From positions 497,117 to 561,116 of IMG/VR virus record IMGVR_UViG_3300046616_000314: DNA of 64,000 nt; one strand, 5' to 3'. A program made the position numbers and the translations under genes. Positions 9,733 to 62,998 of this stretch are shown in pieces. The notes under the pieces were generated by a model. That model saw nothing but the letters and a program-made list of their open reading frames with translations, made no database searches and was not told where the DNA came from. Positions within the stretch are counted from its first letter, which is position 1; each line of letters opens with the position of its first letter.

Positions 9733-10902
9733 ATGAAATCTGAATTATTCAAAGTCCTGTCCGACCGTGGGTTCATCAACCAAACAACCAATTTGGCTGC
9801 GTTGGATGATGCGGCTGTTGCTGGTCCGATCACGGCATACATCGGCTTCGACCTGACGGCGAACAGCCTGCATGTCGGTTCTCTGATTCAGATCATGGTG
9901 TTGCGTTGGATGCGCAAGCTGGGTCACAATCCCCTAATTCTCCTGGGCGATGCTACAACTCGTGTGGGCGATCCCTCGGGTAAGAGCACGGCTCGCCCGA
10001 TCCTGACCACGGAACAAATCGGTTCCAATCGCCAAGGAATCGAGAAAGTTTTTAAGACGCTTGTTCCCGAACCTCAATTCGTCACGAACGAAGCGTGGTT
10101 CAACGGCGAAACGGGTTTCTTTGAATTTCTCCAAGAATACGGTTCGATGTTCAGTATCAATCGTATGCTGACGTTCGATTCGGTAAAGAGCCGTCTCAAG
10201 CCCGACTCGTCTCTGTCGTTCCTTGAATTCAACTACATGCTGATGCAAGCGGTTGATTTCTTCAAGCTGAACGAATTGCAAAATTGTATCTTGCAAGTCG
10301 GTGGCTCGGATCAATGGGGCAACATCATCAACGGCGTCGAGCTAACCCGCAAGAAAGCTCAACGGGAAGTCTTCGGGCTGACTACCCCTCTGATGACCAA
10401 CGTTGCTGGGGAAAAAATGGGCAAGACGGCTTCTGGCGCCGTTTGGCTTGATCCCGAAAAGACTTCGGCGTTTGATTTCTGGCAGTTTTGGCGCAATGTC
10501 GAAGATGCCAAGGTTGGTGAATTCCTGCGTCTGTTCACCGAACTTGATCTCGGAGAAATCGAAAATATTATTGCCAAGGATGTCAACGAAGCCAAGATCG
10601 TCCTGGCGGACACCGTTACTGGAATGGTTCATCCCAATTTTGGCGGCGAGCTTCCCGTTCTCAATCGCCATCGGTCGCATCTGTTCGCCGCTGGTCAAGT
10701 ATCGATCTCGCAACTGTTCGTGGAAGTTGGGCTGGCAAAATCGAACGGTGATGCTGCCCGTCTTGCTCAAAATGGTGGTTTGAAATTGGATGATGTTCTG
10801 GTACAAGATGTTCGTCGTCTTGTATCCGAGAGTGACATTCCCGCCTCGGGTATGAAATTCTCGCTTGGGAAAAAGAAGTCGGTAATTTTGAAATTGGTTT
10901 AG
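9733..10902 (+). CDS. tyrS: tyrosyl-tRNA synthetase
   Basis: YIGFDLTANSLHVGS, QVGGSDQWGNI, KMGKT; C-terminal S4-like domain. Confidence 0.98.
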   Translation: MKSELFKVLSDRGFINQTTNLAALDDAAVAGPITAYIGFDLTANSLHVGSLIQIMVLRWMRKLGHNPLILLGDATTRVGDPSGKSTARPILTTEQIGSNRQGIEKVFKTLVPEPQFVTNEAWFNGETGFFEFLQEYGSMFSINRMLTFDSVKSRLKPDSSLSFLEFNYMLMQAVDFFKLNELQNCILQVGGSDQWGNIINGVELTRKKAQREVFGLTTPLMTNVAGEKMGKTASGAVWLDPEKTSAFDFWQFWRNVEDAKVGEFLRLFTELDLGEIENIIAKDVNEAKIVLADTVTGMVHPNFGGELPVLNRHRSHLFAAGQVSISQLFVEVGLAKSNGDAARLAQNGGLKLDDVLVQDVRRLVSESDIPASGMKFSLGKKKSVILKLV

Positions 10903-11052
10903 TAGCTCCGAAAGGGCGAAAGCCCTGAACCCATAAGTCCGAAGGTAGGTGACTGGGAGGCTGTTCAGCGTAAAGGTACTGCTTCACTCCATTAAACACA
11001 GGATGAAGATGCCTCGGATAATCAAGAGTTTGCTTGATATTGGTAGCTACTA
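10900..11052 (+). ncRNA. candidate structured ncRNA (TAAGTCC family)
   Basis: Closing stem TAGTAGCT/AGCTACTA around several hairpins; contains TGAACCCATAAGTCC. Confidence 0.5.
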
Positions 11053-11083
11053 AAAAGAGCCGGGGAGTGATCCCCGGCTCTTT
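11053..11083 (+). terminator. intrinsic terminator, likely bidirectional
   Basis: AAAGAGCCGGGGA-GTGA-TCCCCGGCTCTTT. Confidence 0.8.
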
Positions 11084-11199
11084 CTACGATTCCTAAGAGC
11101 ATCCTACCATTTCTGGCTGTGGGTTTTTCGGGGTCACTCGTTTGAACCGTTGCTACTCTAGACCCTTGTTCACATATTAACCATACGCCTTAACGAAAA

Positions 11200-11691
11200 T
11201 TAACTCAAGTAAATTCGTGCTTTCATGGCGTCTTCGACATATTGGAAGACAAACGAAGTATCTAGTTCGGCGAAAAGCCCTTCGCACCGATCCTTCAACC
11301 ATTGCAGGTTGGATTTATCATCGCGGATGCGCTTCTTCTTCATGACGCGATAGACCTTGTTATTTTCATCGCGTTCGAAGCCTGGGAAGCCCGCTTGTTC
11401 CAGAACCCTTGATTGACGCTTGTTAAGACGGCGCCATTCCCAGTAAGGCAAAAGATACTGGTTGGCGGTGTTCGCCGTGATTTCATACATCGTCATGTAA
11501 CGACTATCAGTCACGCGAGCATATGGGCGCCGCACCATTTCCGCGATCTTGAACGGGCGGTTTTGGGGACTGACCTGTTTCGTCTCACGTTCTGGCTGCA
11601 CCTGTTTAGGTGGCACGTATTCCACGTGTGGAAGCCAGTATTGAGGATCAGGAGAAACCATATCACCAACATTAATTGAAATTATAGTCAT
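11200..11691 (-). CDS. divergent FKLKW-like family protein
   Basis: WLKDRC...FVFQYVEDAMKARIYL. Confidence 0.6.
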   Translation of the reverse strand: MTIISINVGDMVSPDPQYWLPHVEYVPPKQVQPERETKQVSPQNRPFKIAEMVRRPYARVTDSRYMTMYEITANTANQYLLPYWEWRRLNKRQSRVLEQAGFPGFERDENNKVYRVMKKKRIRDDKSNLQWLKDRCEGLFAELDTSFVFQYVEDAMKARIYLS

Positions 11692-11795
11692 ATATTAACG
11701 CAGGAATCCCACAAGTCAAGTATTAACTGAGACTATTACGAATTCTCCTAAATAAATACAGTAAGTGCCTTTTACAGGCTATTAAGGAGATATTC

Positions 11796-12380
11796 ATGGC
11801 TACGGTTTCCAATTTCGGAATTCCTAATGGCGGTGGCGGTGGTCGTGGCGGCTTCATCCATCCCAAGACAAAGCAGAAGTTCCGCGTCCGCGTGTTCAAT
11901 TTTGGACCGGTAGCCGGTGGTTTGGAACTGACGCAACAAGTTGAGACGGTTGATCGTCCCGGCGTTACTTTCGATTCGAACGAAGTTCACTCGTACAACT
12001 CACTGGCGTACTACGCTGGTAAGGCGAAGTGGGATTCGATCAACCTTGTTATCCGTGATGATATTTCTAACTCGGTAAACAAGTTGGTCGGACACCAGTT
12101 GCAGAAGCAAATGAATTTCTTCCAACAAACGTCGGCTGCTGCGGGTTCGAACTATAAGTTCCAAACCTTCATCGAAACCCTCGACGGTGGTAATGACACT
12201 GTGTACGAGCAATGGACTCTTGAAGGCTGCTTCCTAGAATCCGCTAAGTACGATCAGTTTGACTACAAGTCGAGCGATCACATGACCATCCAACTGAGCA
12301 TTCGTTACGATAACGCAACCCAATCTGACGGCTTGATGGACCTGAATCCTCAACTGGGCGTCGGACCTATGCAAATGTAA
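11796..12380 (+). CDS. tail tube protein
   Basis: gp19-like: PKTKQKFRV, YAGKAKWDSINLVIRD, EQWTLEGCF, IQLSIRYDNA; ATAAATA and AAGGAG upstream. Confidence 0.9.
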   Translation: MATVSNFGIPNGGGGGRGGFIHPKTKQKFRVRVFNFGPVAGGLELTQQVETVDRPGVTFDSNEVHSYNSLAYYAGKAKWDSINLVIRDDISNSVNKLVGHQLQKQMNFFQQTSAAAGSNYKFQTFIETLDGGNDTVYEQWTLEGCFLESAKYDQFDYKSSDHMTIQLSIRYDNATQSDGLMDLNPQLGVGPMQM

Positions 12381-12395
12381 TGAGAGAATTGGTCT

Positions 12396-43988: not shown

Positions 43989-44213
43989 ATGCTGCCCCTG
44001 AACCTATCCCCTGGTACCTTGGTTCGTATGACCCTGGTTCCGAGCCCTACGTTCATCCTAGAGCGTTATTACGATCATACACTGGACGGGTATCCCGGCG
44101 ATCCTGAACCGCCTCTGGAACGCCAATGGGTTCTGATTTGGGGTCTAGATAAACGAACCGATTGTCCGTATCAGGTTCGGGTGTCACGTATCGCTCTTAC
44201 CACAGAGACTTAG
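43989..44213 (+). CDS. hypothetical small protein
   Basis: AGGA RBS. Confidence 0.5.
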   Translation: MLPLNLSPGTLVRMTLVPSPTFILERYYDHTLDGYPGDPEPPLERQWVLIWGLDKRTDCPYQVRVSRIALTTET

Positions 44214-44907
44214 GTCGCGGTAAGCAAAGCGGTCGCGGAGGCTCTGTCTTCACGACAGGTATGCCCGGCTTTGGAAATTCTTTATCTTCCATCTTGGGTG
44301 TAGGTTCGTGCTTACGCTTAAGTTCGATCCATTGACCCGCCATGTTGTTGCCGCTGGCAACCCGTTGGTCAAACACGTACCCGAATTGTTCTAGTTGTAA
44401 GACTGTCATGACTCGTGGCTGGCGATTGTCCAGCACATAGCTTCCGTTTGTGGTAACAACGATCAGTACGGCATGATAGCCGCCGGTTTCTGTGTATGTA
44501 AGCGTGAACAGCAACGGCGCCGCATCAACCCCCAGGTCCATCAGTCGGCGCATTTTCCACAACGCAAAGCCGTCGCAGTCGTCGTAGAGCTTCCCATTGC
44601 TCATGCAGGGAAAATCCCATAGATCGCGGTCGCCCCAGGTTACGGAATCATCGCGCCACGTGATGAGCGTGTTGCCTTCGCTATTCACCGCATTGAGGCT
44701 GTTGAGAAGTTCGGGCGTGAACGTGATTGCGGATGCCTTGCCCTTGGCTGCGCGCTTTATGAACGTACGGTCTCTAGCCGCGAAATCTTTCATAGTGGCA
44801 GGGGCAGAAATGTATTTGGAAGTTTGAGGTAAGAAGCGATTATTGATCGGCTTCGCATAAACCGAAGTCGCCAGGAAGGCAAAAATCATACACAATAAAA
44901 CACGCAC
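44197..44907 (-). CDS. transglutaminase-like cysteine peptidase (BTLCP/LapG-like), secreted
   Basis: Signal peptide; D.W..P...DCDGFALWK...HAVL...VLDN Cys-His-Asp triad. Confidence 0.85.
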   Translation of the reverse strand: MRVLLCMIFAFLATSVYAKPINNRFLPQTSKYISAPATMKDFAARDRTFIKRAAKGKASAITFTPELLNSLNAVNSEGNTLITWRDDSVTWGDRDLWDFPCMSNGKLYDDCDGFALWKMRRLMDLGVDAAPLLFTLTYTETGGYHAVLIVVTTNGSYVLDNRQPRVMTVLQLEQFGYVFDQRVASGNNMAGQWIELKRKHEPTPKMEDKEFPKPGIPVVKTEPPRPLCLPRPKSLW

Positions 44908-45445: not shown

Positions 45446-45475
45446 AAAAAAGCCCTGACCGAAGCCAGGGCTTTT
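45446..45475 (-). terminator. terminator of the ncRNA operon
   Basis: Minus strand AAAAGCCCTGGC-TTCG-GTCAGGGCTTTTTT. Confidence 0.85.
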
Positions 45476-45751: not shown

Positions 45752-45948
45752 TGGATATCGAAGGGAGGATTTATACCTCCGTCCTCTCCCGCTGTTAGCA
45801 GGACGCTCTTGCCCCTCAACCGTTTCTTACTGGTGCGTATGCATCCGCAATCAGTTCATAACGATTGAAGCCTGATGTAAGCGGTCATTAAGACACCGAA
45901 GGTCTCCTAACTTACCCCGCCTAGTCTCATCATCTGAGCTACTTCGAA
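45752..45948 (-). ncRNA. tRNA-like RNA with ~127-nt D-loop
   Basis: Same 5' TTCGAAGTAGCTCAGA and GCAAGAGCG; T-arm GGAGG-TATAAAT-CCTCC; CTTCGAT-ATCCA end. Confidence 0.75.
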
Positions 45949-46298
45949 CTTGTGTGCCCATCGGGCAAAACTGTTGATCGTACTCTCCGACCTGTCACGA
46001 CTAGCATGATCCCTGATTTTCATCAAGTCCAACATATGCGCGCTCGTTCCGCAAGCTTACCTTGCCCATCGGGCGAATTGGCGGGGGCACTTCCCTCTTC
46101 GACGGGATCGCTCGCGCGGGGCAATCCCAAAGCCAAAGTGTGAAGGCGGAACCTACCCCCTGCGTCATGGCATTTCGACCACGCAGGTTTTGACTCCGCT
46201 TTTTCAGCCTATCTCCGGGTGATATCACTTCCCGTACCTCGGCGTCTACTCGTTTGCCCATTCAGGCAAATTTTACGGTATCACCTTCATCTATCTCA

Positions 46299-46503
46299 TG
46301 CGGTGCAGCATGGGACTCGAATCTGGCTTCCCGAAGGACCCGCTTACCGCTCCTGCGCTATGGGCACTACTCCATCCGCTTAGGACCGGTGCGCTGACCA
46401 GTCTGATTGTGGGTGGGTCGCTACTCCCACTGTCGGCATTCCTCCAAGGTGCTCCCTGGCTGCTCCACCGTCTCTTTGGACTTAACGGTTCAGCACCGCG
46501 CCA
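46299..46503 (-). ncRNA. candidate structured RNA (TAAGTCC family)
   Basis: GCGGTGC/GCACCGC closing pair; 5' GGCGCGGTGCTGAACCGTTAAGTCCAA. Confidence 0.5.
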
Positions 46504-46747
46504 AGTAATTGTTTTAGGTCGGTCTCTCACCCGCTTCACTACGTTCCACGAGTTTGGGGATCAGCCGAAGGCTTAGCCACCAGAGATTTTCAAACGCAGA
46601 CTGATAACAGAACCAGTCCGATGTACGTCCCTACCTATCTTGATCCGAAGACCAAGAATAAAAGTGAGTGGAGCGCAAGCGCATCAACACTCAAGTATCA
46701 CTGGACTTACCGGTCACACCCTCAACCGCGCCGTGTTTCTCATCTAC

Positions 46748-46775
46748 ACTCTACACTAGTTCAAACTAGTGTCAA
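46748..46775 (-). promoter_or_regulatory. sigma70-type promoter with overlapping palindrome
   Basis: TTGACA-16-TAGAGT; ACACTAGT-TCAA-ACTAGTGT at 46753-46772. Confidence 0.6.
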
Positions 46776-46790
46776 GCATTTATTTTTGTC

Positions 46791-46927
46791 TGGTCTGATC
46801 TTCTACCAACACTGGACACCGCATTATTATTCCAGCTATTGACAGCGAAGCTTCTGAACTTTCCTCGTTGGAGGCGTTATCAGTCGCGAAGGTGTCTGCC
46901 TCTCGGGGGAAAGGCGCGATCAGACCA
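46791..46927 (-). ncRNA. candidate structured RNA
   Basis: 10-bp closing stem TGGTCTGATC/GATCAGACCA; inner GACACC/GGTGTC. Confidence 0.5.
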
Positions 46928-47152
46928 AACAAAACCAAACTAATCACTTGCTAATTTACCTAAGCCACGTTGTGATCCCATGGTTTCATCGAATGCATTA
47001 CAGCATCCGGTGTGTCTTGTTTAGCTTTACTTCCGACTATCCGCCCTACCATAGAGAGCGAAGGGAGCCAGAAGGGTCAAGACTAACCCTAAATCTCGTT
47101 CAAATTTTCAAAGACCAGAGAGAGTTTGTTACCGCCGTCTCTCTATGTCCCC

Positions 47153-49940: not shown

Positions 49941-50231
49941 TTATTTAGCGGTGTAATGACTGAACTTCATCAAAAACATTACAGCTTCCTCGGATGACCA
50001 GAACCGGAATACACGAACCGGAGTGTCATCGCGAGTGATGAAAAATTCTACGTTTTGAAGATTGCGATCATACAGCCATTTCAAAATTTCGAAATTGGCT
50101 TCCTTGCTCATGTCATGGATGATGACGCAGCGATGACAAATCTTGATGTTTCGGGGATTGTTGTGCCAGAGAACACTTGCGTTATTTTTCTCAACGCCGT
50201 GGACTCGAAATTCGGCAGGATAGACTTTCAT
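49941..50231 (-). CDS. FKLKW-motif family protein
   Basis: FWSSEEAVMFLMKF. Confidence 0.75.
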   Translation of the reverse strand: MKVYPAEFRVHGVEKNNASVLWHNNPRNIKICHRCVIIHDMSKEANFEILKWLYDRNLQNVEFFITRDDTPVRVFRFWSSEEAVMFLMKFSHYTAK

Positions 50232-50521
50232 GAATACATAACGCGGACTAAACCGCCCTTAAGTTTGAAGTATACCGCGTCATCTACGTTGTGAAACCGA
50301 ACGATAATCCGATCATTGATCGGTCTCTCAACATATAGAGTGTGCGGGAAACCTTCTAATGTGTCATATAATTTATCAGAAACATTACTGGCTGTCCATA
50401 AAATCACGTCATGTTCGGGATCGTAGGTATATCTAAGCTTGGTCAGAAACAGATATTCAACCCGTTTATCCGATGTCCAAACGGCATCGTATACTAAGTC
50501 AATACCATCCCAGTCACTCAT
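50228..50521 (-). CDS. FKLKW-motif family protein
   Basis: FHNVDDAVYFKLK. Confidence 0.75.
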   Translation of the reverse strand: MSDWDGIDLVYDAVWTSDKRVEYLFLTKLRYTYDPEHDVILWTASNVSDKLYDTLEGFPHTLYVERPINDRIIVRFHNVDDAVYFKLKGGLVRVMYS

Positions 50522-50817
50522 CAGAAGTATTTAAGCTTGAAGACAGCCGCGTCCTCTTCGGACTTACACCGGACGACGTAAACACACTCGCCGTTGCAGT
50601 ACAGTAATTCAAAGTCGATGGGAGAGCCCTCAACCATCAGTTCTTTGATAATTTCTAGTCGGTTATCGCAGATATCGCTAAGAATCTCATCGTCAACCAA
50701 CAGGTCGCCCGGCTGTTCATGATAAGCGAAGAAATCTGAATCGATTTCGAAGTACGAACTTCCTTCGGGTGAGGGCTTAACCGTCCTGCATGTTCTGGAC
50801 ACGTATAATCCCCTCAA
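50521..50817 (-). CDS. FKLKW-motif family protein
   Basis: SEEDAAVFKLKYF. Confidence 0.75.
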   Translation of the reverse strand: MRGLYVSRTCRTVKPSPEGSSYFEIDSDFFAYHEQPGDLLVDDEILSDICDNRLEIIKELMVEGSPIDFELLYCNGECVYVVRCKSEEDAAVFKLKYF

Positions 50818-50821
50818 AAAA

Positions 50822-50896
50822 TGGTAGACCGGGTGGGGATCGAACCCACGACAATCCGATTAAAAGTCGGATGCTCTACCACTGAGCTACCGGTCC
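50822..50896 (-). tRNA. tRNA-Lys(UUU)
   Basis: Cloverleaf; TCCGA-CT TTT AA-TCGGA; CCA. Confidence 0.95.
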
Positions 50897-50948
50897 ACGG
50901 TGGTATGTGTTTTTCTACAGAATTTTTGTTAGAGCGTCAAGTAGAAAA

Positions 50949-51245
50949 TCAAAGCCATTTGAATTTAAACAGAGCGTAGTCTTCTTCCGAACCAAACTCA
51001 AAGTCGATATAATAGGGAAGATGATACGAATATCCTGCAATAGATGGGCATTTGGACAAGTGTTTCTTGCACCAATCACGCACGTTACTGGTAAGACTCA
51101 AATAAAAAGACGGTGAATTACCCATGCGAGATTGATAAAGCAGATATGTGCGCTCTTGTTCAGTGTCCCAACGAAACGCCATGCTACGATCAAAGATCGT
51201 AACTTTGTCCTCACGCACAATCTTGACTTTGAACATCAGAACCAC
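50949..51245 (-). CDS. FKLKW-motif family protein
   Basis: FGSEEDYALFKFKWL. Confidence 0.75.
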   Translation of the reverse strand: MVLMFKVKIVREDKVTIFDRSMAFRWDTEQERTYLLYQSRMGNSPSFYLSLTSNVRDWCKKHLSKCPSIAGYSYHLPYYIDFEFGSEEDYALFKFKWL

Positions 51246-51514
51246 TTCAGCTTGAACAGAGCCATATCTTCTTCTTTCTCGAATAGGATATAGGCTGCTT
51301 CAAGTTCGGATGCTTTATCCATACCAGTACCAACCGCTCCAAAATATTGATATACAATATTTTGATCGCTAAGCCAATACTCGATCTCTTGATACATTTC
51401 CGTAGTCAAAACTTCTTCGGAGTAAACGCCGCCCAACAACTCGAAATGAGTCATTGCGTCGATCACCTTCCAACGTTGTTCATACGGAATGATGAGGCAG
51501 TTCGTTAAAGCCAT
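51236..51514 (-). CDS. FKLKW-motif family protein
   Basis: FEKEEDMALFKLKWF. Confidence 0.8.
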   Translation of the reverse strand: MALTNCLIIPYEQRWKVIDAMTHFELLGGVYSEEVLTTEMYQEIEYWLSDQNIVYQYFGAVGTGMDKASELEAAYILFEKEEDMALFKLKWF

Positions 51515-51825
51515 TTCAATTGGAACAGTACGAGATTTTCTACAGTGTCAAACTTGAGAAAATATAGCACGTCGGAATAGTAGCTGTCATACCTAAAATT
51601 GAAATCAAACTCATGCTTCCCGGCAACCTCAACCGCATCGTGCTTGAAGAAAGCATAGCCATTATGCATGGGAAGATTGTGAGCACACCATACCCGAATG
51701 TCGGGATGTAAGATGTAATCGTAAGTACCGCGCGCAGACCAACGATAAAGCAACAAGCATTTCGTTGGTAATGCTAAGCAAGTCGGGTCCGTAAAAGGTT
51801 CGCTGGGGATCGGTAACACCGTCAA
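51505..51825 (-). CDS. FKLKW-motif family protein
   Basis: FDTVENLVLFQLKWL. Confidence 0.75.
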   Translation of the reverse strand: MTVLPIPSEPFTDPTCLALPTKCLLLYRWSARGTYDYILHPDIRVWCAHNLPMHNGYAFFKHDAVEVAGKHEFDFNFRYDSYYSDVLYFLKFDTVENLVLFQLKWL

Positions 51826-51853
51826 CCCAGAAAGATAGCGTCCATAATATTAC

Positions 51854-52168
51854 TTATACTTGGGCGCCAGCCCATCTAAGCATGAACAGCATCTTTTCGT
51901 CTACAGTTCTAAAAATAATATACGCCCCATGTTCAAAGCCGCCTGCTGGATAAACGAATATCCCATCAACGTCGTGATCGTAACACCATTGCAACGCCGT
52001 GGGGTGCAGCCGATGGTAAGAATGGAACGGACTGAAACCGTAATACGGAAACTCAAAAAAATTTTCAGAAGGAAAAGTGGGACTATCAGTCACCGCCCAG
52101 GTCGTAGTGGTAATACCAACACCACCGCGACATTGGATTCCCAACTCGGATACATCATCAAACGTCAT
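51854..52168 (-). CDS. FKLKW-motif family protein
   Basis: FRTVDEKMLFMLRW. Confidence 0.75.
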   Translation of the reverse strand: MTFDDVSELGIQCRGGVGITTTTWAVTDSPTFPSENFFEFPYYGFSPFHSYHRLHPTALQWCYDHDVDGIFVYPAGGFEHGAYIIFRTVDEKMLFMLRWAGAQV

Positions 52169-52389
52169 CCGAACTTCAACCGAAACAATGCTGCGTCGTG
52201 TTCATCAATGAACCTAAAGGTAAGGTCTACACGCTTGGTGTTCTCGTTGATTTCAACATCCGAGCATAGCCAATCATTGACCATCATATTGTTTGTGTTA
52301 CACCAATTCTTGCACTTGGTAATTGCTTCCACATAGTTCTCGTATGTTATCAAGTGAACGCAATGAGGATATTTCCAACTCGTAGTCAT
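52165..52389 (-). CDS. FKLKW-motif family protein
   Basis: FIDEHDAALFRLKFG. Confidence 0.8.
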   Translation of the reverse strand: MTTSWKYPHCVHLITYENYVEAITKCKNWCNTNNMMVNDWLCSDVEINENTKRVDLTFRFIDEHDAALFRLKFG

Positions 52390-52640
52390 CCGAATCTCAA
52401 CTTGAATGCGATAACGTCTTCTTCAAATCGGAAGTAATAGACCACTTTCCCTTCCAACAATCGCGCCGCCAAAACATACGCAGGAAGCCCCTCGGCATCC
52501 TTGCACGTTTTTCGTAGCCAATCTTCAGCCAGACCGATGGCTTGAAAACTTTCAAATTGATGGGTCAACCGATGCGGATATTTCGCAAAGTTATGAAGCG
52601 GTAAACCATTTATATCGCGCCGCCGAATAGGATGTATCAT
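52386..52640 (-). CDS. FKLKW-motif family protein
   Basis: FRFEEDVIAFKLRFG. Confidence 0.8.
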   Translation of the reverse strand: MIHPIRRRDINGLPLHNFAKYPHRLTHQFESFQAIGLAEDWLRKTCKDAEGLPAYVLAARLLEGKVVYYFRFEEDVIAFKLRFG

Positions 52641-52894
52641 CCGAATTTCACCTTGAACATCATGGCGTCTTCTTCGCTCTCAAACATATACGTTGTCGTT
52701 GCCGAAAAATCACCGTCTCGCTTTTTATAGTCCGTATGATACTTCCAACGAGACGTGCAGTTGTCTCGCAACCAACTATATAACATTTGAAACGTTGCGC
52801 GATTGCTCACAAATTGCTGCATCGAATCATAAGTGAATGCAACTATAACGTTCGGGATTGTATCAGAGTGCGGATCGCGCGCCATCAGACCCAC
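52637..52894 (-). CDS. FKLKW-motif family protein
   Basis: FESEEDAMMFKVKFG. Confidence 0.8.
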   Translation of the reverse strand: MGLMARDPHSDTIPNVIVAFTYDSMQQFVSNRATFQMLYSWLRDNCTSRWKYHTDYKKRDGDFSATTTYMFESEEDAMMFKVKFG

Positions 52895-53118
52895 TTCAAT
52901 GCAAACATGATTGCATCTTCCTCGCTCTCAAAAAGGAACTGTATTAGTAAGTCGGGACCATCGTCATACCATTTCCACATAGTATCGTAATTCCACCGAT
53001 CTATGCAGTTTTTCTGAAGCCAAATCCGCATCTGTTCCAAATCAATTTCATCATCCATTTCGATGACGATTTTCGGATCAGTGTCTTTATGAGGACCGAG
53101 CCCGATCACGATAGCCAC
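52885..53118 (-). CDS. FKLKW-motif family protein
   Basis: FESEEDAIMFALKWV. Confidence 0.8.
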   Translation of the reverse strand: MAIVIGLGPHKDTDPKIVIEMDDEIDLEQMRIWLQKNCIDRWNYDTMWKWYDDGPDLLIQFLFESEEDAIMFALKWV

Positions 53119-53438
53119 TTCATCTTGAACAACAAAGCATCATCGTCGCGTTGAACACTCAACATGAAATGAGACGCCTTCGGATCATAATCCGGGTCAT
53201 CACCGCGCATCATCCGCATGATGATTTTGAACTTAGCCTTCGGATGCGTAGATGACATGATCCACGCATACACTTCCGGCTTGAAAGTGACGTAATCATT
53301 GTTACGTCCGCGCTTACAACTAAATTTTTGGGGATGACTGACAGAGGTCAGAATATCAGGCAACATGATGTCCCGAAATCGTTGTCGATCCGGTTCACGA
53401 GGCTTTGGAAGCCTAATAAGAGTTGCCTGTTGACGCAT
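53106..53438 (-). CDS. FKLKW-motif family protein
   Basis: DDDALLFKMKWLS. Confidence 0.8.
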   Translation of the reverse strand: MRQQATLIRLPKPREPDRQRFRDIMLPDILTSVSHPQKFSCKRGRNNDYVTFKPEVYAWIMSSTHPKAKFKIIMRMMRGDDPDYDPKASHFMLSVQRDDDALLFKMKWLS

Positions 53439-53482
53439 AGAATAATTATCGCATGTTACGATAATTTCGTCAAGTATTGTGA

Positions 53483-53614
53483 AGATGCTATCTGAATGCA
53501 GTTAGCCGAAAATTAATACCAACCTTCTCAATAAGCTGGTTTTCCAGAATCCCATCATCCACTAGGCATTACAAGTGACGATCCTGTCATCAACCTCATG
53601 ATACAATAGCATCT
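53483..53614 (-). ncRNA. candidate structured RNA 3' of tRNA-Leu(UAA)
   Basis: 9-bp closing stem AGATGCTAT/ATAGCATCT. Confidence 0.4.
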
Positions 53615-53624
53615 ACAGAATACT

Positions 53625-53710
53625 TGGTGCGGGCGGTCGGAATCGAACCGACACGGGCTATGCCCAACAGATTTTAAGTCTGGTGCGTCTACCAGTTTCG
53701 CCACGCCCGC
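53625..53710 (-). tRNA. tRNA-Leu(UAA)
   Basis: Long variable arm; CT TAA AA loop; CCA. Confidence 0.93.
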
Positions 53711-53726
53711 TCACAAGTTTACTTTC

Positions 53727-53811
53727 TGGTAGCTCTACCCGGAGTCGAACCGGGACGCCTTTCGGCAATAGATTTTGAGTCTACCGCGTCTACCAGTTCC
53801 GCCATAGAGCC
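53727..53811 (-). tRNA. tRNA-Leu(CAA)
   Basis: Long variable arm; CT CAA AA loop; CCA. Confidence 0.93.
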
Positions 53812-53854
53812 TCACAGAAAGTATTCTTGATCCTAGATCAAGGGTGGTTTGGTG

Positions 53855-54109
53855 TCAAGTTCTTTTGCCGCGTGTTCCGCCATAATCCGAAAATTTAAAC
53901 ACTTCTTTGGTAGTCTTGATGTTTGAATAATCAATTCTGACGTAATACTTGCCCTTGCGTTTCTTCACTTCGGTAGAACCTCTCAGTTCGCGAATAAAGA
54001 AACTGCCATCGGGTCTTTCGAGCACGGTTCGGTTTAGCGTCTTGGAGCTATCCAATCGACCATTGACGTAGTTTTCGAAGATGATTTCTTGTGAACCAAG
54101 GTTGTTCAT
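53855..54109 (-). CDS. hypothetical protein
   Basis: GAGG RBS; between tRNAs. Confidence 0.65.
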   Translation of the reverse strand: MNNLGSQEIIFENYVNGRLDSSKTLNRTVLERPDGSFFIRELRGSTEVKKRKGKYYVRIDYSNIKTTKEVFKFSDYGGTRGKRT

Positions 54110-54126
54110 TCAATCCTCGAAAAATT

Positions 54127-54211
54127 TGGTGCGAGTGAGAGGAATCGAACCTCCACGCCTTTCGGCGCTAGAACCTAAATCTAGTGCGTCTACCAATTCC
54201 GCCACACTCGC
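54127..54211 (-). tRNA. tRNA-Leu(UAG)
   Basis: CTAGA-TT TAG GT-TCTAG; CCA; own TTGACA-17-TACTTT promoter upstream. Confidence 0.95.
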
Positions 54212-54276
54212 GCAGTGACCTAAGCCACTGTTTAGAAAGTACCATACGAAATTTTTGATGTCAAAATCTAATTTCG

Positions 54277-54564
54277 TCACCAAGCCAAAAGCTGGTCACT
54301 CCCGAAACTCAGAACAAACATGAAGGCATCATCAACCAAATCAAAGTAATAGATGATGTCATATTTACCGCCCCAAACATATTGGCAATAAACTTCATGT
54401 TGCGGGCAATGCTTTTTAATCCATTGGACACGTTTCGGATGGTTGTGAACGTGATCTTTGATGCCACACTTAATGGCAACCAAATAAATTTCATCGCCAT
54501 TGGGCAGAGTGGTTTTCTCGATCTCCATCAGAACCATTCCGATTTCAAAAGCTTCCGGTCCCAC
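54277..54564 (-). CDS. FKLKW-motif family protein
   Basis: FDLVDDAFMFVLSFG. Confidence 0.7.
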   Translation of the reverse strand: MGPEAFEIGMVLMEIEKTTLPNGDEIYLVAIKCGIKDHVHNHPKRVQWIKKHCPQHEVYCQYVWGGKYDIIYYFDLVDDAFMFVLSFGSDQLLAW

Positions 54565-54806
54565 TTCAGTTTGTACAACGCGGCATCGGTGTCATCATCG
54601 AAGACGATGGCTTGAATCTGAAATGACGGCGCCAGGAAAATAATTTCCCATTTGCCTTTGATGTTCTGAGCCAACCATTGACCCAATTCATTTTCGGGAA
54701 TAGGAACCCAACCCGTGCCATTCACCCAGACGGTTTTGCACGCTACTCCATCTACCGTTCTAGGTAGAGGGAGTGAGTGCATATTCATGGCATTGGCGTC
54801 GATCAT
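54528..54806 (-). CDS. FKLKW-motif family protein
   Basis: FDDDTDAALYKLKW. Confidence 0.75.
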   Translation of the reverse strand: MIDANAMNMHSLPLPRTVDGVACKTVWVNGTGWVPIPENELGQWLAQNIKGKWEIIFLAPSFQIQAIVFDDDTDAALYKLKWDRKLLKSEWF

Positions 54807-55162
54807 TGACCCCGGAACTTCTTCGACAGGCGTTCGAATTCCTGGCGTTCCCGTTCCAGAACGAACACTTCGCGCTCGCGTTCCAGCTTCACGCGCTTCT
54901 CGAATTCTTCGTCGGTTTCCAGTCGGTCGCCAACCAAGCCGAGATATTGCTTGTCGGTGGTTTCCGAATAGGGACCATAATCGACGCCGACGTATTCGAA
55001 GCGGATATTGGTGAAGACGCCCGCGCCTTCATGTTGCGTACGCAGTTCATTGATGCGCTTGATGACTTCATCGAAACTGCCTTCGACGTAGGCGTCATCG
55101 GTGATCGTCTTGGTGACGCGCAGCTTTTGGGGACCAGCGGGGGTCTTGACTTGCTTGCTCAT
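54803..55162 (-). CDS. hypothetical protein
   Basis: RLETDEE...ERQEFERLSKKF. Confidence 0.75.
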   Translation of the reverse strand: MSKQVKTPAGPQKLRVTKTITDDAYVEGSFDEVIKRINELRTQHEGAGVFTNIRFEYVGVDYGPYSETTDKQYLGLVGDRLETDEEFEKRVKLEREREVFVLERERQEFERLSKKFRGQ

Positions 55163-55163
55163 G

Positions 55164-55427
55164 TTATTGGTTCCAGACGGAGGCGACGACGAACTGACCG
55201 GTCGCCCGGTCCTTGATCAGGGTGGTGATTTGCAGCACGTTCCAAGCAAGAGCCTTGCCACGAACGTATTCAGCGGCGAAACGCAGGTATTCGTTGCGAC
55301 CCTGTTCGGTGTCGCGTTTGCTGTCCGAATAGCTCTGGTTGAATTCCATGGTTTCGATTTGACCATCGACGTTCAGCGCGAAGGTCTTAGCGCAGCCGAG
55401 GATGTCTTCTTGGGCTTGATCGGTCAT
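55164..55427 (-). CDS. hypothetical protein
   Basis: GGAG RBS; TTGACA upstream. Confidence 0.7.
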   Translation of the reverse strand: MTDQAQEDILGCAKTFALNVDGQIETMEFNQSYSDSKRDTEQGRNEYLRFAAEYVRGKALAWNVLQITTLIKDRATGQFVVASVWNQ

Positions 55428-55476
55428 GTGAATCTCCATAAGCAATAATGGGAGAATATCACATATCAGAGTGTTG

Positions 55477-55773
55477 TCAAGCCCATTTTATCTTGTAGAG
55501 GAAGGCGTCTTCTTCATTTTTGAAGAGGAAATAGTATTTGTACTTCCCGGTCTTACGATAGTCGTAAACGAGGAAGTAATCGTATCTACTGATGTTTTTG
55601 AATAGCCAATCGTTAAGCGGCGATGGATAAACCAGTTCGCCATATTGTCTGCCAGGATTGAACTTGATTATGTTTTTAAGCTGGAAAGGGATGGTGTATC
55701 CCACGGTAAGTTTGACATCACCGAAGGCATGACACGTGTCGTACAAAAGGTCGGTGACGGTATGCACGGGCAT
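55477..55773 (-). CDS. FKLKW-motif family protein
   Basis: FKNEEDAFLYKIKWA. Confidence 0.75.
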   Translation of the reverse strand: MPVHTVTDLLYDTCHAFGDVKLTVGYTIPFQLKNIIKFNPGRQYGELVYPSPLNDWLFKNISRYDYFLVYDYRKTGKYKYYFLFKNEEDAFLYKIKWA

Positions 55774-55826
55774 TAATGGTCTTTCCAGGCTAAATAACAG
55801 CATAACATTGTTCGGAAACTATTGCT

Positions 55827-59454: not shown

Positions 59455-60408
59455 ATGCCTGATATTAATGACGCCCGCATTGACGGCACTTCTGTTTATT
59501 TCATTCCCGATGACGCTAACGTAAGTGTCAGCGGTGAACCGACGACAGTTAAAACGGTTGAAGGTCCCCCAGGTCCGCAGGGTCCGATTGGTAACACGGG
59601 TGTCACGGGCGCATCGATCTCCAACGCGGTTGTCAATTCGACAACGGGTGCTCTGACTTTCACGCTGACTGATAACACGGTCGTTGAAGCAGGCATCGTG
59701 CCGCCCGGTCCCGCTGGTCCACAAGGACCCCAAGGCAACACGGGTGTTCAAGGTATCCAGGGTATTCAGGGCGTCCAAGGAAACCCAGGCTCGCCCGGCA
59801 TCCCAGGTATTCAGGGCATCCAAGGTCCGATTGGTAACGCGGGTGTCCAAGGTCCGCAAGGCGTTGGCGTTACGAATGCTGCTGTCAATTCTAGCACGGG
59901 TGTTCTGACTTTCACCCTATCAAATAACGCCACAGTCGTCGCAGGAACGGTCCCCGCTGGTCCTCAAGGGGTGCAGGGCATCCAAGGCATTCAAGGGCTT
60001 CCTGGCTCTCCTGGCGCGACCGGCAACACGGGTTTGACAGGCAACACGGGTCCGATTGGTCCCAAAGGTGACAACTTCGAAGTCGTCATTTCCAACAGTG
60101 CCGTATCTGGTAACTACGTCATGGACATCGGAACGTCGAACAACCTTTACAACTTGACACTAGTCGGTTCCACGAGTTTGATTTTCTCGAATGCGACACA
60201 AACAACGCGCACCTATACAGGCATCGTTGTCATTCGACAAAACGCCACAGGTGGTTACTCTGTGACTTTCCCTGCCAATTGCCGCACTCCAAATGACGAA
60301 CAATACATCGTTTCCACTGCACCAAACGCGATGGACGTGTACACGTTCTTCACATTTGATGGTGGATCAACCTATCTATTGAATCAAATCGGGCAGTATT
60401 ACCAGTAA
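59455..60408 (+). CDS. collagen-repeat tail fibre/appendage protein
   Basis: G-X-Y triplets; duplicated NAVVNSTTGALTFTL domain; ATAAATA upstream. Confidence 0.8.
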   Translation: MPDINDARIDGTSVYFIPDDANVSVSGEPTTVKTVEGPPGPQGPIGNTGVTGASISNAVVNSTTGALTFTLTDNTVVEAGIVPPGPAGPQGPQGNTGVQGIQGIQGVQGNPGSPGIPGIQGIQGPIGNAGVQGPQGVGVTNAAVNSSTGVLTFTLSNNATVVAGTVPAGPQGVQGIQGIQGLPGSPGATGNTGLTGNTGPIGPKGDNFEVVISNSAVSGNYVMDIGTSNNLYNLTLVGSTSLIFSNATQTTRTYTGIVVIRQNATGGYSVTFPANCRTPNDEQYIVSTAPNAMDVYTFFTFDGGSTYLLNQIGQYYQ

Positions 60409-61679: not shown

Positions 61680-61727
61680 GTACCTGATTTTTAACAGGAA
61701 ATTATTTTATCGAAAATTTGATTTTAT

Positions 61728-61761
61728 TATTGACGCTCACTCGTCGTTATGAGATAAATAG
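61728..61761 (+). promoter_or_regulatory. promoter TATTGAC-N18-GATAAATAG of the leader/tRNA operon
   Basis: Same motif and spacing as 57053-57086. Confidence 0.65.
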
Positions 61762-61817
61762 AAATACGAACTGCCACTGAGGCGGCTCGCAACCCATTTT
61801 TGGAGACCACCAGTTCA

Positions 61818-61943
61818 ATGACTCGTTCGTTCCACATTGTTGCAGATATCACCAGCGCGGGCATTCCAGCCGCCGCTGTGATGATCCGTGACTTTGCGAA
61901 CCAACCCGTCAATCAACCGGGTCTCGGAGGCATGTACGTGTAA
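61818..61943 (+). CDS. putative attenuator leader peptide MTRSFHIVADITSAGIPAAAVMIRDFANQPVNQPGLGGMYV (41 aa)
   Basis: GGAG RBS; followed by a terminator; codons match downstream anticodons. Confidence 0.7.
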   Translation: MTRSFHIVADITSAGIPAAAVMIRDFANQPVNQPGLGGMYV

Positions 61944-61970
61944 ACTGAATATCATCAGTTTTAGGGTACC

Positions 61971-62005
61971 GAGCCTCCTGAACGTAAAGTTCTGGGGGCT
62001 TTTTT
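61971..62005 (+). terminator. attenuator terminator upstream of tRNA-Ile
   Basis: GAGCCTCC-T-GAAC-GTAAA-GTTC-T-GGGGGCTT-TTTT. Confidence 0.85.
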
Positions 62006-62025
62006 AATGCCCGAAATCCTGATGG

Positions 62026-62101
62026 GGTCCTTTAGCTCAGTTGGTAGAGCATCGTCTTGATAAGGCGAGGGTCGCTGGTTCAAGTCCAGCAGGGACTACC
62101 A
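62026..62101 (+). tRNA. tRNA-Ile(GAU)
   Basis: TCGTC-TT GAT AA-GGCGA; CCA. Confidence 0.93.
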
Positions 62102-62141
62102 AATTTTTAACTCTAACCGGAAGCCTTATCAACTTCCAAGT

Positions 62142-62216
62142 GGTGCTGTAGCTCAGTGGGAGAGCATCGGGTTGTCAGTCCGAGGGTCGCGGGTTCAATC
62201 CCCGTCAGCACCGCCA
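62142..62216 (+). tRNA. tRNA-Asp(GUC)
   Basis: TCGGG-TT GTC AG-TCCGA; GCCA. Confidence 0.93.
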
Positions 62217-62629
62217 CTTTCGCAGAGGAAGAAATTCCAATGCAAAATTTTCTGATTTGCCTCCCCGGCTGTTTCGATGACCGGGGAGGCAGGTAAGGAA
62301 ATGGTCTTTGACATAACACTCATACTTTTTGAGTGCCTGAATATTATCAGATGGGAACAGTGCCGTTCCTGTGCATGGGAATCATTTCGTGCTTAGCAGT
62401 CTGATATGGGAAGAAATACAGTCACCAAGCCCTGTAGGCTTGTTCTGACTGTTGGCAACTCCACCCGCCTACGGGCGTTTCGGGCACTTTAATAGTATGA
62501 GCGTTGTGTCGGTCTTTGACATTGTTGAAAAAACAAACAGTACACCCCGCCGTGGCGACGATGATCGCGGCGGGGTGACAGGAAAGTTGCGCCAAGTATC
62601 AACCGTGGTACTTCGCATAACTTTTCTGT

Positions 62630-62703
62630 TGGGGAATGGTGTAATGGTAACACGCTGGGCTTTGGTCTCAGAATTCTAGGTTCGAGTCCTAGTTCCCCAA
62701 CCA
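62630..62703 (+). tRNA. tRNA-Gln(UUG)
   Basis: CTGGG-CT TTG GT-CTCAG; CCA. Confidence 0.92.
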
Positions 62704-62747
62704 TTTAAGTTATTACTATTGCTTGAAGGAAACTTCAAGCTCAAAGT

Positions 62748-62826
62748 CGCGGGAAGGACAAGATAGTTAGTCACCAGCCTCATAAGCTGGAATATCTGGT
62801 AGATGCGAGCACTACTCCCGCTCCCA
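62748..62826 (+). tRNA. atypical tRNA-Met(CAU), initiator-like acceptor
   Basis: CGCGGGA/TCCCGCT (C1 mismatch); CCAGC-CT CAT AA-GCTGG; irregular D and T arms. Confidence 0.65.
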
Positions 62827-62830
62827 ACTC

Positions 62831-62998
62831 GGCACGGTGATGAACCGGTAAGTCCAAGCGAATGAAGGTCCGACATAGCGGTTGTTGGAGCAAGGTCCCT
62901 CCCTCAAAGAGGGGCGCCTAGAAATTGGTCCCCTGGAACCCGTGACAATCCAGGGGCGAAAGTCTCTCCATTGGCGGCTGGTTGGAGAGAGCCCGGTA
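62831..62998 (+). ncRNA. candidate structured RNA (TAAGTCC family)
   Basis: GGCACGGTGATGAACCGGTAAGTCCAA then hairpins TCCGACA/TGTTGGA, CCCTC/GAGGG, CCCCTGGA/TCCAGGGG, TCTCTCCA/TGGAGAGA. Confidence 0.55.

What the first reader, a model, noticed from the sequence alone, without database searches (positions are those of the whole stretch)
10900..62998. Dispersed four-member RNA family sharing an ACC-NN-TAAGTCC motif
GGCGCGGTGCTGAACCGTTAAGTCCAA (minus, ~46502-46476) and GGCACGGTGATGAACCGGTAAGTCCAA (plus, 62831-62857) match at 24 of 27 nt. Both later contain TGGAGCA, able to pair with TCCA. A third copy, GGCGCGGT-TGAGGGTGTG-ACCGGTAAGTCCA (minus, ~46732-46702), keeps the CGGT/ACCG hairpin and starts just after a promoter. 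A weaker fourth, TGAACCCATAAGTCCGAAG, is at 10926. All lie near the 5' end of intergenic structured RNAs linked to translation genes or the ncRNA operon. The family is unknown to me; a loose resemblance to SRP RNA elements is unverified.
Basis: seen in the sequence. Interest (0 to 1): 0.65.

Follow-up and report, generated by a model that had tools for sequence, protein, structure and literature searches.

The report
Conserved bulged hairpin in huge-phage RNAs
A roughly 30-base RNA hairpin of unknown function recurs in the tRNA and non-coding RNA operons of two related huge phages, matches no described RNA family, and most likely serves as a shared recognition tag rather than as four related RNA genes.

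Summary
The motif is real and not due to chance. ACCNNTAAGTCC occurs 4 times in the window, against 0.04 expected, and nowhere else in the 561-kb phage record.

It is a self-contained irregular hairpin, not the 5' end of four homologous RNAs:
- P1 is YGGC / G(U)CCR with a bulged U.
- The internal loop is R / (KU)AA.
- P2 is CGGU / ACCG.
- The loop is GMUGA, or longer in some copies.

Covariance models find six firm copies. Three are in the window (A, B, D). Three are in a syntenic 415-kb relative. All are co-oriented with local transcription inside tRNA or ncRNA operons. One copy carries a compensatory G-C to C-G change in P1.

The TGGAGCA pairing and the SRP resemblance are not supported.

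Nothing in Rfam matches. I tested and rejected RNase P, Y RNA, K-turn/L7Ae, CRISPR-repeat and GOLLD/ROOL readings. No copies turned up in other huge phages, GenBank phages, metagenome contigs or 185,000 prokaryote genomes.

My best guess, at low-to-moderate confidence, is a common handle bound by one trans-acting factor. It would mark or protect the 5' boundary of RNA modules co-transcribed with tRNAs. Transcript ends at the hairpin remain unmapped.

The parts
46699..46736 (-). Copy A. Sequence: ACAC-GGCG-CGGU-[UGAGGGUGUG]-ACCG-GUAAGUCC-AGUG. It is promoter-proximal, starting about +9 of the ncRNA operon transcript.
   Evidence: Model R1, built without this copy, scores it 25.8 bits, E 2e-4. 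R2 scores it 36.6 bits. Both arms and both flanks are kept around a loop that is 5 nt longer.
46474..46506 (-). Copy B. Sequence: ACUU-GGCG-CGGU-GCUGA-ACCG-UUAAGUCC-AAAG. It lies 230 nt downstream of A in the same operon.
   Evidence: 51 bits. In isolation it folds as P1 + P2.
62827..62859 (+). Copy D. Sequence: ACUC-GGCA-CGGU-GAUGA-ACCG-GUAAGUCC-AAGC. It starts right after the CCA of a tRNA-like element, inside the plus-strand tRNA array.
   Evidence: 50.7 bits. The relative has an identical motif, and their similarity ends at GUCCA.
10896..10944 (+). Copy C, doubtful. It carries CUGAACC-CAU-AAGUCC-GAAGG only and has no P1 5' strand. It lies in the 3' UTR of a TyrRS gene (9733-10902), about 100 nt before a terminator-like hairpin.
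   Evidence: It is an exact 12-mer match, but R1 and R2 do not find it at E<=5-10 with filters off. TyrRS assignment. It is not conserved behind the TyrRS genes of 8 relatives.
62748..62826 (+). Initiator-like tRNA-like element, anticodon loop CUCAUAA. It has a C1xU72 mismatch, an encoded CCA, and aberrant D and T arms. With copy D it forms one conserved 110-nt block.
   Evidence: It is 91% identical to L179 15496-15604, while the flanking sequence is unalignable. Two compensatory changes, U-A to C-G and C-G to U-A, are read. ARAGORN and the Rfam tRNA model do not call it.
46748..46775 (-). Sigma-70-like promoter of the ncRNA operon (TTGACA-16-TAGAGT).
   Evidence: A similar TTGACC-17-TAGATT lies at the same relative place in the relative.
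45448..45475 (-). Intrinsic-terminator-like hairpin that ends the roughly 1.3-kb ncRNA operon.
   Evidence: 12-bp stem followed by a T run.
46072..46210 (-). Block X. This is an independently folding conserved RNA domain downstream of B. It is not part of the motif, but it is the candidate long-range partner that I tested.
   Evidence: 76-78% identical to L179 6278-6460. The consensus fold has 4 pairs changed on both sides. A metatranscriptome contig covers 46084-46234.
62860..63002 (+). 143-nt spacer RNA between copy D and tRNA-Pro. It is not conserved in the relative, where an ORF follows the motif.
   Evidence: z -1.1.

Best explanation
The element is a self-contained RNA hairpin of about 30 nt.

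Architecture:
- P1 is 5'-Y-G-G-C paired with G-(bulged U)-C-C-R-3'.
- The internal loop has one purine opposite (K-U-)A-A.
- P2 is CGGU/ACCG.
- The loop is GMUGA, and longer loops are tolerated.

Its loop, bulge and internal-loop bases are nearly invariant, while everything around it differs. I therefore read it as a common handle recognised by one trans-acting factor, most likely a phage or host protein.

The phage places this handle at the 5' boundary of RNA modules that are co-transcribed with tRNAs. The positions are: at the start of the ncRNA operon (A), between its modules (B), directly after the CCA of a tRNA-like unit (D), and, in the relative, in front of a tRNA-like domain and in the 5' UTR of a small ORF.

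Proposed working: after endonucleolytic separation from the upstream unit, near the conserved ACUY just 5' of P1, the hairpin with its bound factor defines and protects the new 5' end or sorts these RNAs.

Shown: recurrence, strand bias, hairpin architecture with some covariation, sharp conservation boundaries, non-coding context.

Inferred: the binding factor, the cleavage, and the stabilising or sorting effect.
For: Recurrence beyond chance:
- 4 matches against 0.04 expected, and none elsewhere in 561 kb.
- A model built from four copies finds two further copies it had not seen. These are A at 25.8 bits and G001:168885-168917 at 31.5 bits.
- The same model finds nothing in four other large phage records.

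RNA level rather than DNA level:
- All six firm copies point the same way as local promoters, tRNAs and terminators.
- Copy A keeps both arms and both flanks around a loop 5 nt longer.
- The promoter-proximal variant in the relative (L179 6677-6637) keeps GGC-R-[6-bp P2]-AA-GUCC and folds at z = -3.2.

Structure:
- 90.7% of cells are paired.
- Pair 5-29 is G-C in five copies and C-G in one.
- Pair 4-30 is U-A in two copies and C-G in two.
- Pair 12-18 goes from U-A to U.G.
- The slid controls collapse to 10-49% paired.

Module boundary:
- Similarity between the phages, and between paralogues, ends at the last base of the motif.
- D starts 1 nt after an encoded CCA.
- In the relative, one copy sits 10 nt before a tRNA-like domain scoring 19.4 bits with the tRNA model. 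Another sits 45 nt before an ORF.

Non-coding context: overlapping ORFs match no Pfam or PHROG family.
Against: - Only two genomes and six distinct sequences are available. Covariation is suggestive, not decisive: 35 of 500 shuffles reach the score.
- The hairpin is thermodynamically weak. In isolation z runs from -1.3 to +0.8. In 300-nt context the P2 pairing probability ranges from 0.00 to 0.93.
- No transcript end has been mapped at any copy. The RNA contigs found cover block X and an internal piece of the B module, not the hairpin.
- One 129-nt adapter-flanked record could even be read as plus-strand, depending on library type.
- One copy in the relative (G001:168885) is followed only by a terminator-like hairpin, so it heads no obvious module.
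- No candidate binding protein was identified.
- The minus-strand tRNA arrays carry no copy.
Confidence: 0.35

Rival explanations
1. A nut/put-like processive antitermination signal. The nascent hairpin, alone or with a small phage protein, modifies RNA polymerase so that it reads through Rho-dependent and intrinsic stops in long untranslated operons.
For: - A variant copy lies within the first 10-40 nt of the transcript in both ncRNA operons.
- These operons are long and untranslated.
- Five of six firm copies have a pentaloop, GAUGA or GCUGA. This fits the GNNRA pattern of lambda/P22 boxB loops, a comparison from my own knowledge.
- A conserved linear stretch follows the stem, as boxA accompanies boxB.
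Against: - Two copies lie 230 nt apart in one transcript.
- The minus-strand tRNA arrays have none.
- One copy sits at the very end of a unit.
- Copy A and the variant in the relative have 10-13-nt loops, not pentaloops.
- The sequence after the stem pairs back to the 5' flank rather than staying single-stranded, and it does not resemble boxA.
Confidence: 0.15
2. A tertiary-structure or assembly module. The hairpin would be a docking element, combining a GNRA-like loop with a UAA/bulged-U receptor-like internal loop. Through it several phage RNAs would pack against each other or against a common RNA partner such as the ribosome, a tRNA or block X. This would resemble the way the phage-borne ornate RNAs build RNA-only assemblies.
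For: - Loop, internal-loop and bulge nucleotides are invariant.
- The neighbourhood is rich in GNRA hairpins and conserved structured RNA.
- GOLLD and ROOL are phage RNAs near tRNA islands that form homo-oligomeric cages, and GOLLD can carry tRNAs in its linker (10.1101/2024.12.08.627333).
Against: - No conserved pairing partner was found. The best candidates are not conserved between the two phages. The block X candidate strand pairs locally, with covariation.
- One copy sits in an mRNA leader.
- No GOLLD or ROOL match.
Confidence: 0.15
3. A DNA-level site, such as a promoter of a phage-encoded RNA polymerase or the target or footprint of a recombinase or homing endonuclease acting in the tRNA island.
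For: - About 25 bp are conserved with sharp edges in otherwise diverged DNA.
- The copies are confined to the tRNA/ncRNA island that spans the contig ends.
- The RNA fold is thermodynamically weak.
Against: - A 5-nt (copy A) or 6-8-nt (variant in the relative) insertion between the two halves would break a linear DNA site, yet both halves stay complementary.
- A compensatory G-C to C-G change sits 24 nt apart.
- There are only three copies per 561 kb.
- All copies are co-oriented with transcription.
- Copy A lies downstream of an ordinary sigma-70-like promoter.
Confidence: 0.1
4. A divergent member of a known RNA family, with the motif as its conserved core. The candidates are RNase P RNA (P2-P3-CR-I/P4, 'GGAAAGUCC'), SRP RNA, Y RNA (Ro-binding 'GGUCCGA'), 5S rRNA or a small self-cleaving ribozyme.
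For: There are short look-alikes only.
- The arrangement GGCR-hairpin-AAGUCC with a bulged U recalls P2-P3-P4 of RNase P.
- B's AAG(U)CCAAAG is complementary to CUUUGGCUU 346 nt downstream.
- GGAGCAAGG occurs both in D and in E. coli M1 RNA.
Against: - No RNase P, SRP, Y RNA, 5S or ribozyme model reaches even E = 10 on any copy.
- RF00010 finds nothing at these loci in either phage.
- Matches to M1 RNA are 8-12-mers that are not colinear.
- The putative P4 3' strand pairs locally inside block X. Its differences between the phages are compensated there.
- Neither phage has a TROVE/Ro60 gene or an L7Ae gene.
Confidence: 0.03

Closest known systems
Lambdoid nut sites (boxB hairpin plus boxA) and HK022 put RNAs
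   Same: These are short, cis-acting, sequence-specific RNA hairpins in phage transcripts, placed early in operons. BoxB has a GNRA-like pentaloop, and a conserved linear element sits next to the stem. They are recognised by one trans-acting partner. This comparison is from my own knowledge.
   Different: - Here the stem is 4 bp and is extended by a second helix with a bulged U.
- The flank pairs back on itself instead of acting as a boxA.
- Two copies have long loops.
- Copies also occur mid-operon, after a tRNA-like unit and at the end of a unit.
- No N-like protein or boxA was identified.
Stable small RNAs co-transcribed with tRNAs in phage T4 (species 1 and 2 RNAs)
   Same: These are non-tRNA RNAs of unknown function embedded in a phage tRNA operon and released by processing. 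This comparison is from my own knowledge and was not checked here.
   Different: The T4 RNAs are not known to share a common hairpin tag. No sequence relation was seen: GenBank phages gave no match to the D block or to block X.
GOLLD and ROOL ornate RNAs
   Same: They are phage or prophage non-coding RNAs of unknown function, typically beside tRNA islands. GOLLD sometimes carries tRNAs in a linker. The 1.3-kb ncRNA operon here sits beside tRNA arrays, and in the relative it contains tRNA-like pieces.
   Different: There is no match to either Rfam model. The element in question is a 30-nt hairpin repeated in several transcripts, not one large RNA.
RNase P RNA P2-P3-CR-I/P4 region
   Same: The local order is short helix, then variable hairpin, then A-rich linker, then 'AAGUCC', with a bulged U in the helix that uses it.
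   Different: Here the AAGUCC strand pairs with the 4 nt just 5' of the hairpin rather than with a distant CR-V strand. No other conserved RNase P region is present, and no model matches.
[quoted passage not shown]
   Same: A hairpin within a few nucleotides of a primary or processed 5' end protects the downstream RNA from 5'-end-dependent decay. This matches the placement of A, B, D and the mRNA-leader copy. The comparison is from my own knowledge.
   Different: Such stabilisers need only a stem. Here the loop, bulge and internal-loop bases are conserved across paralogues and genomes, which points to specific recognition.

Membership tests
Bacterial RNase P RNA (Rfam RF00010 and relatives) | Covariance-model score at or near the family threshold. 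| tested here: not met
   RF00010 gives no match at the loci in G000 or G001. No RNase P family reaches E<=10 in the scans of all loci.
Bacterial RNase P RNA (Rfam RF00010 and relatives) | Long-range P4 helix between CR-I (AAGUCC strand) and CR-V, kept by covariation. | tested here: not met
   The candidate 3' strand CUUUGGCUU pairs locally with GUCGAAG inside block X. Its changes between the phages are compensated there. No equivalent partner exists for the other copies.
Bacterial RNase P RNA (Rfam RF00010 and relatives) | Colinear conserved regions CR-I to CR-V. | tested here: not met
   Comparison with E. coli rnpB gives only 8-12-nt words in scrambled order.
   No SRP family reaches E<=10 over 45800-47000 or 62000-64000.
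Y RNA / YrlA | Match to a Y RNA model at the motif, plus a Ro60 (TROVE) partner gene. | tested here: not met
   The only YrlA hit, at 19 bits, overlaps ordinary tRNAs. Neither phage has a TROVE domain. A host-encoded Ro60 cannot be excluded.
Small self-cleaving ribozymes (hammerhead, twister, pistol, hatchet, HDV-like) | Match to the family model. | tested here: not met
   None is listed at E<=10 on any locus.
Small self-cleaving ribozymes (hammerhead, twister, pistol, hatchet, HDV-like) | Site-specific self-cleavage. | not testable with these tools
   This needs an in-vitro transcription and cleavage assay.
Lambda-type nut site | BoxB: a 5-bp stem with a GNRA-like pentaloop. | tested here: inconclusive
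   Five of six copies have GAUGA or GCUGA on a 4-bp stem. Copy A has a 10-nt loop.
Lambda-type nut site | BoxA-like single-stranded element, and an N/Nus-dependent effect on termination. | not testable with these tools
   The flank GUAAGUCC does not resemble boxA, and it pairs with the 5' flank. The functional test needs reporters.
CRISPR repeat / solitary-repeat RNA anti-CRISPR | The same unit occurs as a regularly spaced array in a host or phage genome. | tested here: not met
   A scan of 185,579 species genomes gave 7 single, unrelated hits and no arrays. There is no spaced array in the window.
K-turn / box C/D-like element bound by L7Ae-type proteins | Tandem sheared G.A pairs next to a 3-nt bulge, plus an L7Ae-family partner. 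| tested here: not met
   GUGAUGA lies in a 5-nt hairpin loop, where tandem G.A pairs cannot form, as the sequence shows. Neither phage has PF01248.
GOLLD / ROOL | Match to RF01998 or RF03087. | tested here: not met
   No hit in the gathering or E<=10 scans of both ncRNA operons.

The most novel reading that the evidence does not exclude
The hairpin is the address label of a phage-specific RNA system not described before. One factor, or one RNA partner, would gather a set of otherwise unrelated phage RNAs: the modules of a 1.3-kb ncRNA operon, an initiator-tRNA look-alike, tRNA-like domains and one mRNA. The purpose would be coordinated processing, protection or assembly during takeover of host translation.
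Probability: 0.2. Interest if true: 0.7.

Novelty: new variant of a known kind. Interest (0 to 1): 0.45.

Why it matters
Huge phages carry large translation islands of tRNAs, aminoacyl-tRNA synthetases and unexplained non-coding RNA, and how these transcripts are sorted and matured is unknown.

A short, sharply conserved hairpin shared by unrelated RNAs of the island gives a concrete experimental handle. It can be used as bait to find the factor that binds it, and as a marker to delimit the RNA modules.

If it proves to be a processing, stabilising or antitermination signal, it would be a compact, portable part. If it is a docking module, it would tie these RNAs to the growing class of phage RNA assemblies found near tRNA islands.

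At present it is known from only two metagenomic phage genomes, so its reach is narrow.

Tried and rejected
1. RNase P RNA. No RF00010 hit. E. coli M1 matches are not colinear. The putative P4 partner pairs locally, with covariation.

2. Y RNA / Ro. The 'GUCCGAAGGUAG' of copy C resembles metazoan Y RNA from memory, but there is no Y RNA model hit and no TROVE gene.

3. K-turn / L7Ae. No PF01248.

4. CRISPR-repeat mimic. No arrays anywhere.

5. Permuted tmRNA. One 18.7-bit hit at E 0.28 spans tRNA-Ala to the third copy in the relative. ARAGORN finds no tmRNA in the window, in L179 or in the whole 561-kb record.

6. 5S and 16S rRNA look-alikes recalled from memory. No Rfam support.

7. tRNA-like acceptor pairing of B's 5' GCGGUGC with GCACCGC 200 nt downstream. 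It is perfect in G000 but only 6 of 7 in the relative, it competes with the hairpin, and no tRNA model hits the B module. Left open as a possible alternative fold.

8. Long-range pairing of AAGUCCAA with UUGGACUU at 46031-46022. An 8-mer complement is expected only 0.015 times per kb, but it is not conserved in the relative.

9. A seed for trans pairing. GGACUUA is not enriched, with 29 sites against about 68 expected.

10. More relatives. Pattern scans of IMG/VR returned only chance or coding hits, for example P-loop GTGKST, plus the one relative. The metagenome scan gave one coding-looking hit on a gut-metagenome contig (L181, microbial, not followed further). 25 loci and 5 whole records of phages sharing a neighbouring protein hold no copy. 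GenBank phages hold none.

11. Conservation of copy C behind the TyrRS genes of relatives. Absent.

Full report
**Source and setting**

The window is the last 64 kb of a 561-kb IMG/VR virus record, G000 (97% complete by CheckV). The record carries 36 tRNA genes and no tmRNA. Sixteen of the tRNAs lie in the window, in two divergent arrays.

Between them and upstream lies a stretch of about 1.3 kb on the minus strand. It has a sigma-70-like promoter (46775-46748) and a strong terminator-like hairpin (45475-45448). Its small overlapping ORFs match no Pfam or PHROG family.

Yes for three copies.
- The sequences are as quoted.
- ACCNNTAAGTCC occurs four times in the window, against 0.04 in shuffles. 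It occurs nowhere else in the 561 kb.
- One-mismatch variants are at control level.

**A related phage**

A stricter pattern found the motif twice in one other IMG/VR record of 415 kb (G001). That region (L179) is syntenic. Shared proteins flank an ncRNA operon, a minus-strand tRNA array, a collagen-like gene and a plus-strand tRNA array.

**Copies found by covariance models**

A model built from the four near-identical copies (R1) found two copies it had not seen:
- copy A, at 25.8 bits;
- a third copy in G001 at 168885-168917, at 31.5 bits.

A second model with the full structure (R2) scores all six at 36.6-53.8 bits, and the next hit is at 16.6 bits inside a coding ORF.

Nothing comparable is present in:
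- four other large phage records, or 25 loci of phages that share a neighbouring protein;
- GenBank phages;
- metagenome contigs;
- one genome for each of 185,579 prokaryote species.

**What the element is**

Similarity between paralogues and between the two phages stops at the edges of the motif.
- D and its counterpart share a 110-nt block that ends exactly at ...GUCCA.
- B and its counterpart share only 34 nt.

So this is not a family of homologous RNAs with a common 5' domain.

The 27-33 nt fold on themselves:
- GGC pairs with G(U)CC, with the U bulged out.
- The base before GGC pairs with the base after CC.
- One purine faces (K-U-)A-A.
- CGGU pairs with ACCG.
- The loop is GAUGA or GCUGA.

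On the six-sequence alignment:
- 90.7% of cells are standard pairs.
- Sliding the partner by one column drops this to 44-49%.
- Pair 5-29 is G-C five times and C-G once.
- Pair 4-30 is U-A twice, C-G twice and C.A twice.
- Pair 12-18 is U-A five times and U.G once.

Copy A keeps every arm and flank around a 10-nt loop.

The promoter-proximal element of the relative's operon (L179 6677-6637) scores only 7.3 bits. Even so, it has the same plan, GGC-G-[6-bp helix]-AA-GUCC, and folds at z = -3.2.

These points argue for an RNA-level constraint. So does the fact that all six copies point the way the local genes are transcribed.

The caveats are real:
- There are six sequences from two genomes.
- 35 of 500 shuffles reach the covariation score.
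- The hairpin is weak in energy terms.

**The fourth copy (10926)**

- It matches the 12-mer and 17 of 21 nt of B's 3' half.
- It has no 5' arm, and neither model finds it.
- It is not conserved behind the TyrRS genes of eight relatives.

I treat it as a half-copy or coincidence.

The TGGAGCA pairing exists only after B and D, and it competes with P1. The SRP lead has no support.

**Where the copies sit**

- A starts at about +9 of the ncRNA operon, and the variant in the relative at about +22.
- B lies 230 nt further on.
- D begins one base after the encoded CCA of a tRNA-like element (62748-62826). That element has a CAU anticodon loop, a C1xU72 mismatch and odd D and T arms. It is conserved together with D and shows two compensatory changes.
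- In the relative, one copy lies 10 nt before a domain that the tRNA model scores at 19.4 bits.
- Another copy in the relative lies 45 nt before a 110-codon ORF.
- The third lies near the end of a unit, just before a terminator-like hairpin.

**Expression**

Runs holding the operon are rhizosphere and freshwater metagenomes.
- A metatranscriptome contig covers 46084-46234 (block X).
- An adapter-flanked 129-nt record covers 46332-46460.
- No RNA contig covers a hairpin, and contigs cannot give ends or strand.

**Known families tested**

I followed several resemblances and dropped them. The details are listed under Tried and rejected and Membership tests.

The most tempting was RNase P, with GGCR-hairpin-AAGUCC read as P2-P3-P4 with a bulged U. 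B's AAG(U)CCAAAG is complementary to CUUUGGCUU 346 nt downstream.
- The RNase P model finds nothing.
- Matches to E. coli M1 RNA are short and out of order.
- The downstream strand belongs to block X, a 139-nt domain conserved at 76-78% between the phages. There it pairs locally, and its substitutions are compensated.

**Most likely working**

The bases that are unpaired in the model (loop, bulged U, UAA) are the most conserved, and the surroundings are free to vary. This is the signature of a recognition element.

Its placement at the start of transcripts, between modules, straight after a tRNA-like 3' end and in an mRNA leader fits a handle at the 5' boundary of RNA modules. One factor would read that handle and define, protect or sort them. 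I put this at about 0.35.

The rivals are:
- a nut/put-like antitermination signal (0.15);
- a tertiary docking or assembly module, in the spirit of the phage RNAs GOLLD and ROOL that also live beside tRNA islands (0.15);
- a DNA-level site (0.1).

Homology to a known RNA family is unlikely (0.03).

**Novelty and verdict**

This is a real, small, previously undescribed RNA motif restricted, as far as these collections show, to one lineage of huge phages. Its kind, a cis-acting recognition hairpin in phage operons, is familiar. Its sequence, fold and distribution are new, and its function is unproven. It is of moderate interest.

Noticed in passing
window 62748-62826 (+); L179 15496-15575 (+): An initiator-tRNA look-alike. 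It has a 6-bp acceptor stem with a C1xU72 mismatch (C1xA72 in the relative), anticodon loop CUCAUAA and an encoded CCA. It has a 3-bp D stem without GG and a 9-nt T loop without UUC. It is 91% conserved between the phages, with two compensatory stem changes. Neither ARAGORN nor the Rfam tRNA model calls it. It could be a decoy or a specialised tRNA.
   Followed up: partly
window 46072-46210 (-); L179 6298-6436 (-): Block X is a conserved RNA domain of about 139 nt in both ncRNA operons. Its multi-helix consensus fold has 4 pairs changed on both sides. No Rfam model matches it. A 151-nt contig in a small rhizosphere metatranscriptome covers it.
   Followed up: partly
window about 46268, 46075, 45965 (-); L179 about 6300, 6155, 5895 (-): Recurrent short hairpins of the form U(U/C)GCCYGA(A)UGGGCA punctuate both ncRNA operons between conserved blocks. 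They may be processing or protein-binding sites.
   Followed up: no
window 45950-45933 and 45732-45714 (-): The 19-mer AAGUUCGAAGUAGCUCAGA occurs twice in the 3' half of the ncRNA operon. It reads like a T-loop fragment joined to a D-arm start, so it may be a tRNA-derived piece.
   Followed up: no
L179 5941-5997 (-) and 5624-5714 (-): The relative's ncRNA operon holds two tRNA-like pieces. One is a 57-nt tRNA lacking the anticodon arm (Rfam tRNA 37.3 bits). The other is a tRNA-like domain with a long insertion in the anticodon arm and a truncated acceptor stem (19.4 bits).
   Followed up: partly
window 50200-55800 (-): A tandem series of small paralogous ORFs of about 75-110 codons is interleaved with tRNA genes. 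Their ends are conserved and their stops and starts overlap (repeat families D3, D4 and D10). Function unknown.
   Followed up: no
window 62026-63699 (+), and G000 3940-8110 (+): The plus-strand tRNA array runs off the end of the contig and appears to continue at its start, in the same gene order as in the relative. The 'linear' record is therefore probably a circular or permuted genome cut inside the tRNA island.
   Followed up: no
window 9733-10902 (+), 6170-9142 (+), 59455-60408 (+), 44197-44907 (-): Protein genes seen while annotating:
- a class I Tyr/Trp-type tRNA synthetase (Pfam E 6e-64);
- a 990-aa tail sheath;
- a collagen-like G-X-Y repeat protein;
- a BTLCP-type transglutaminase-like cysteine protease.
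   Followed up: partly
L179 16838-16884 (+): Two tandem copies of CUGUCCAAGGCUUGGAC(R)GCACUC, each a GUCCAAG/CUUGGAC hairpin, lie directly upstream of the third motif copy in the relative.
   Followed up: no
window 46332-46460: A 129-nt insert with Illumina adapters on both sides, and GGG next to one adapter, turned up in a run labelled as possibly RNA from 'organism A'. It is either a short fragment of the B module or a contaminant. If the library is a template-switch type, the strand would be plus, that is antisense.
   Followed up: no
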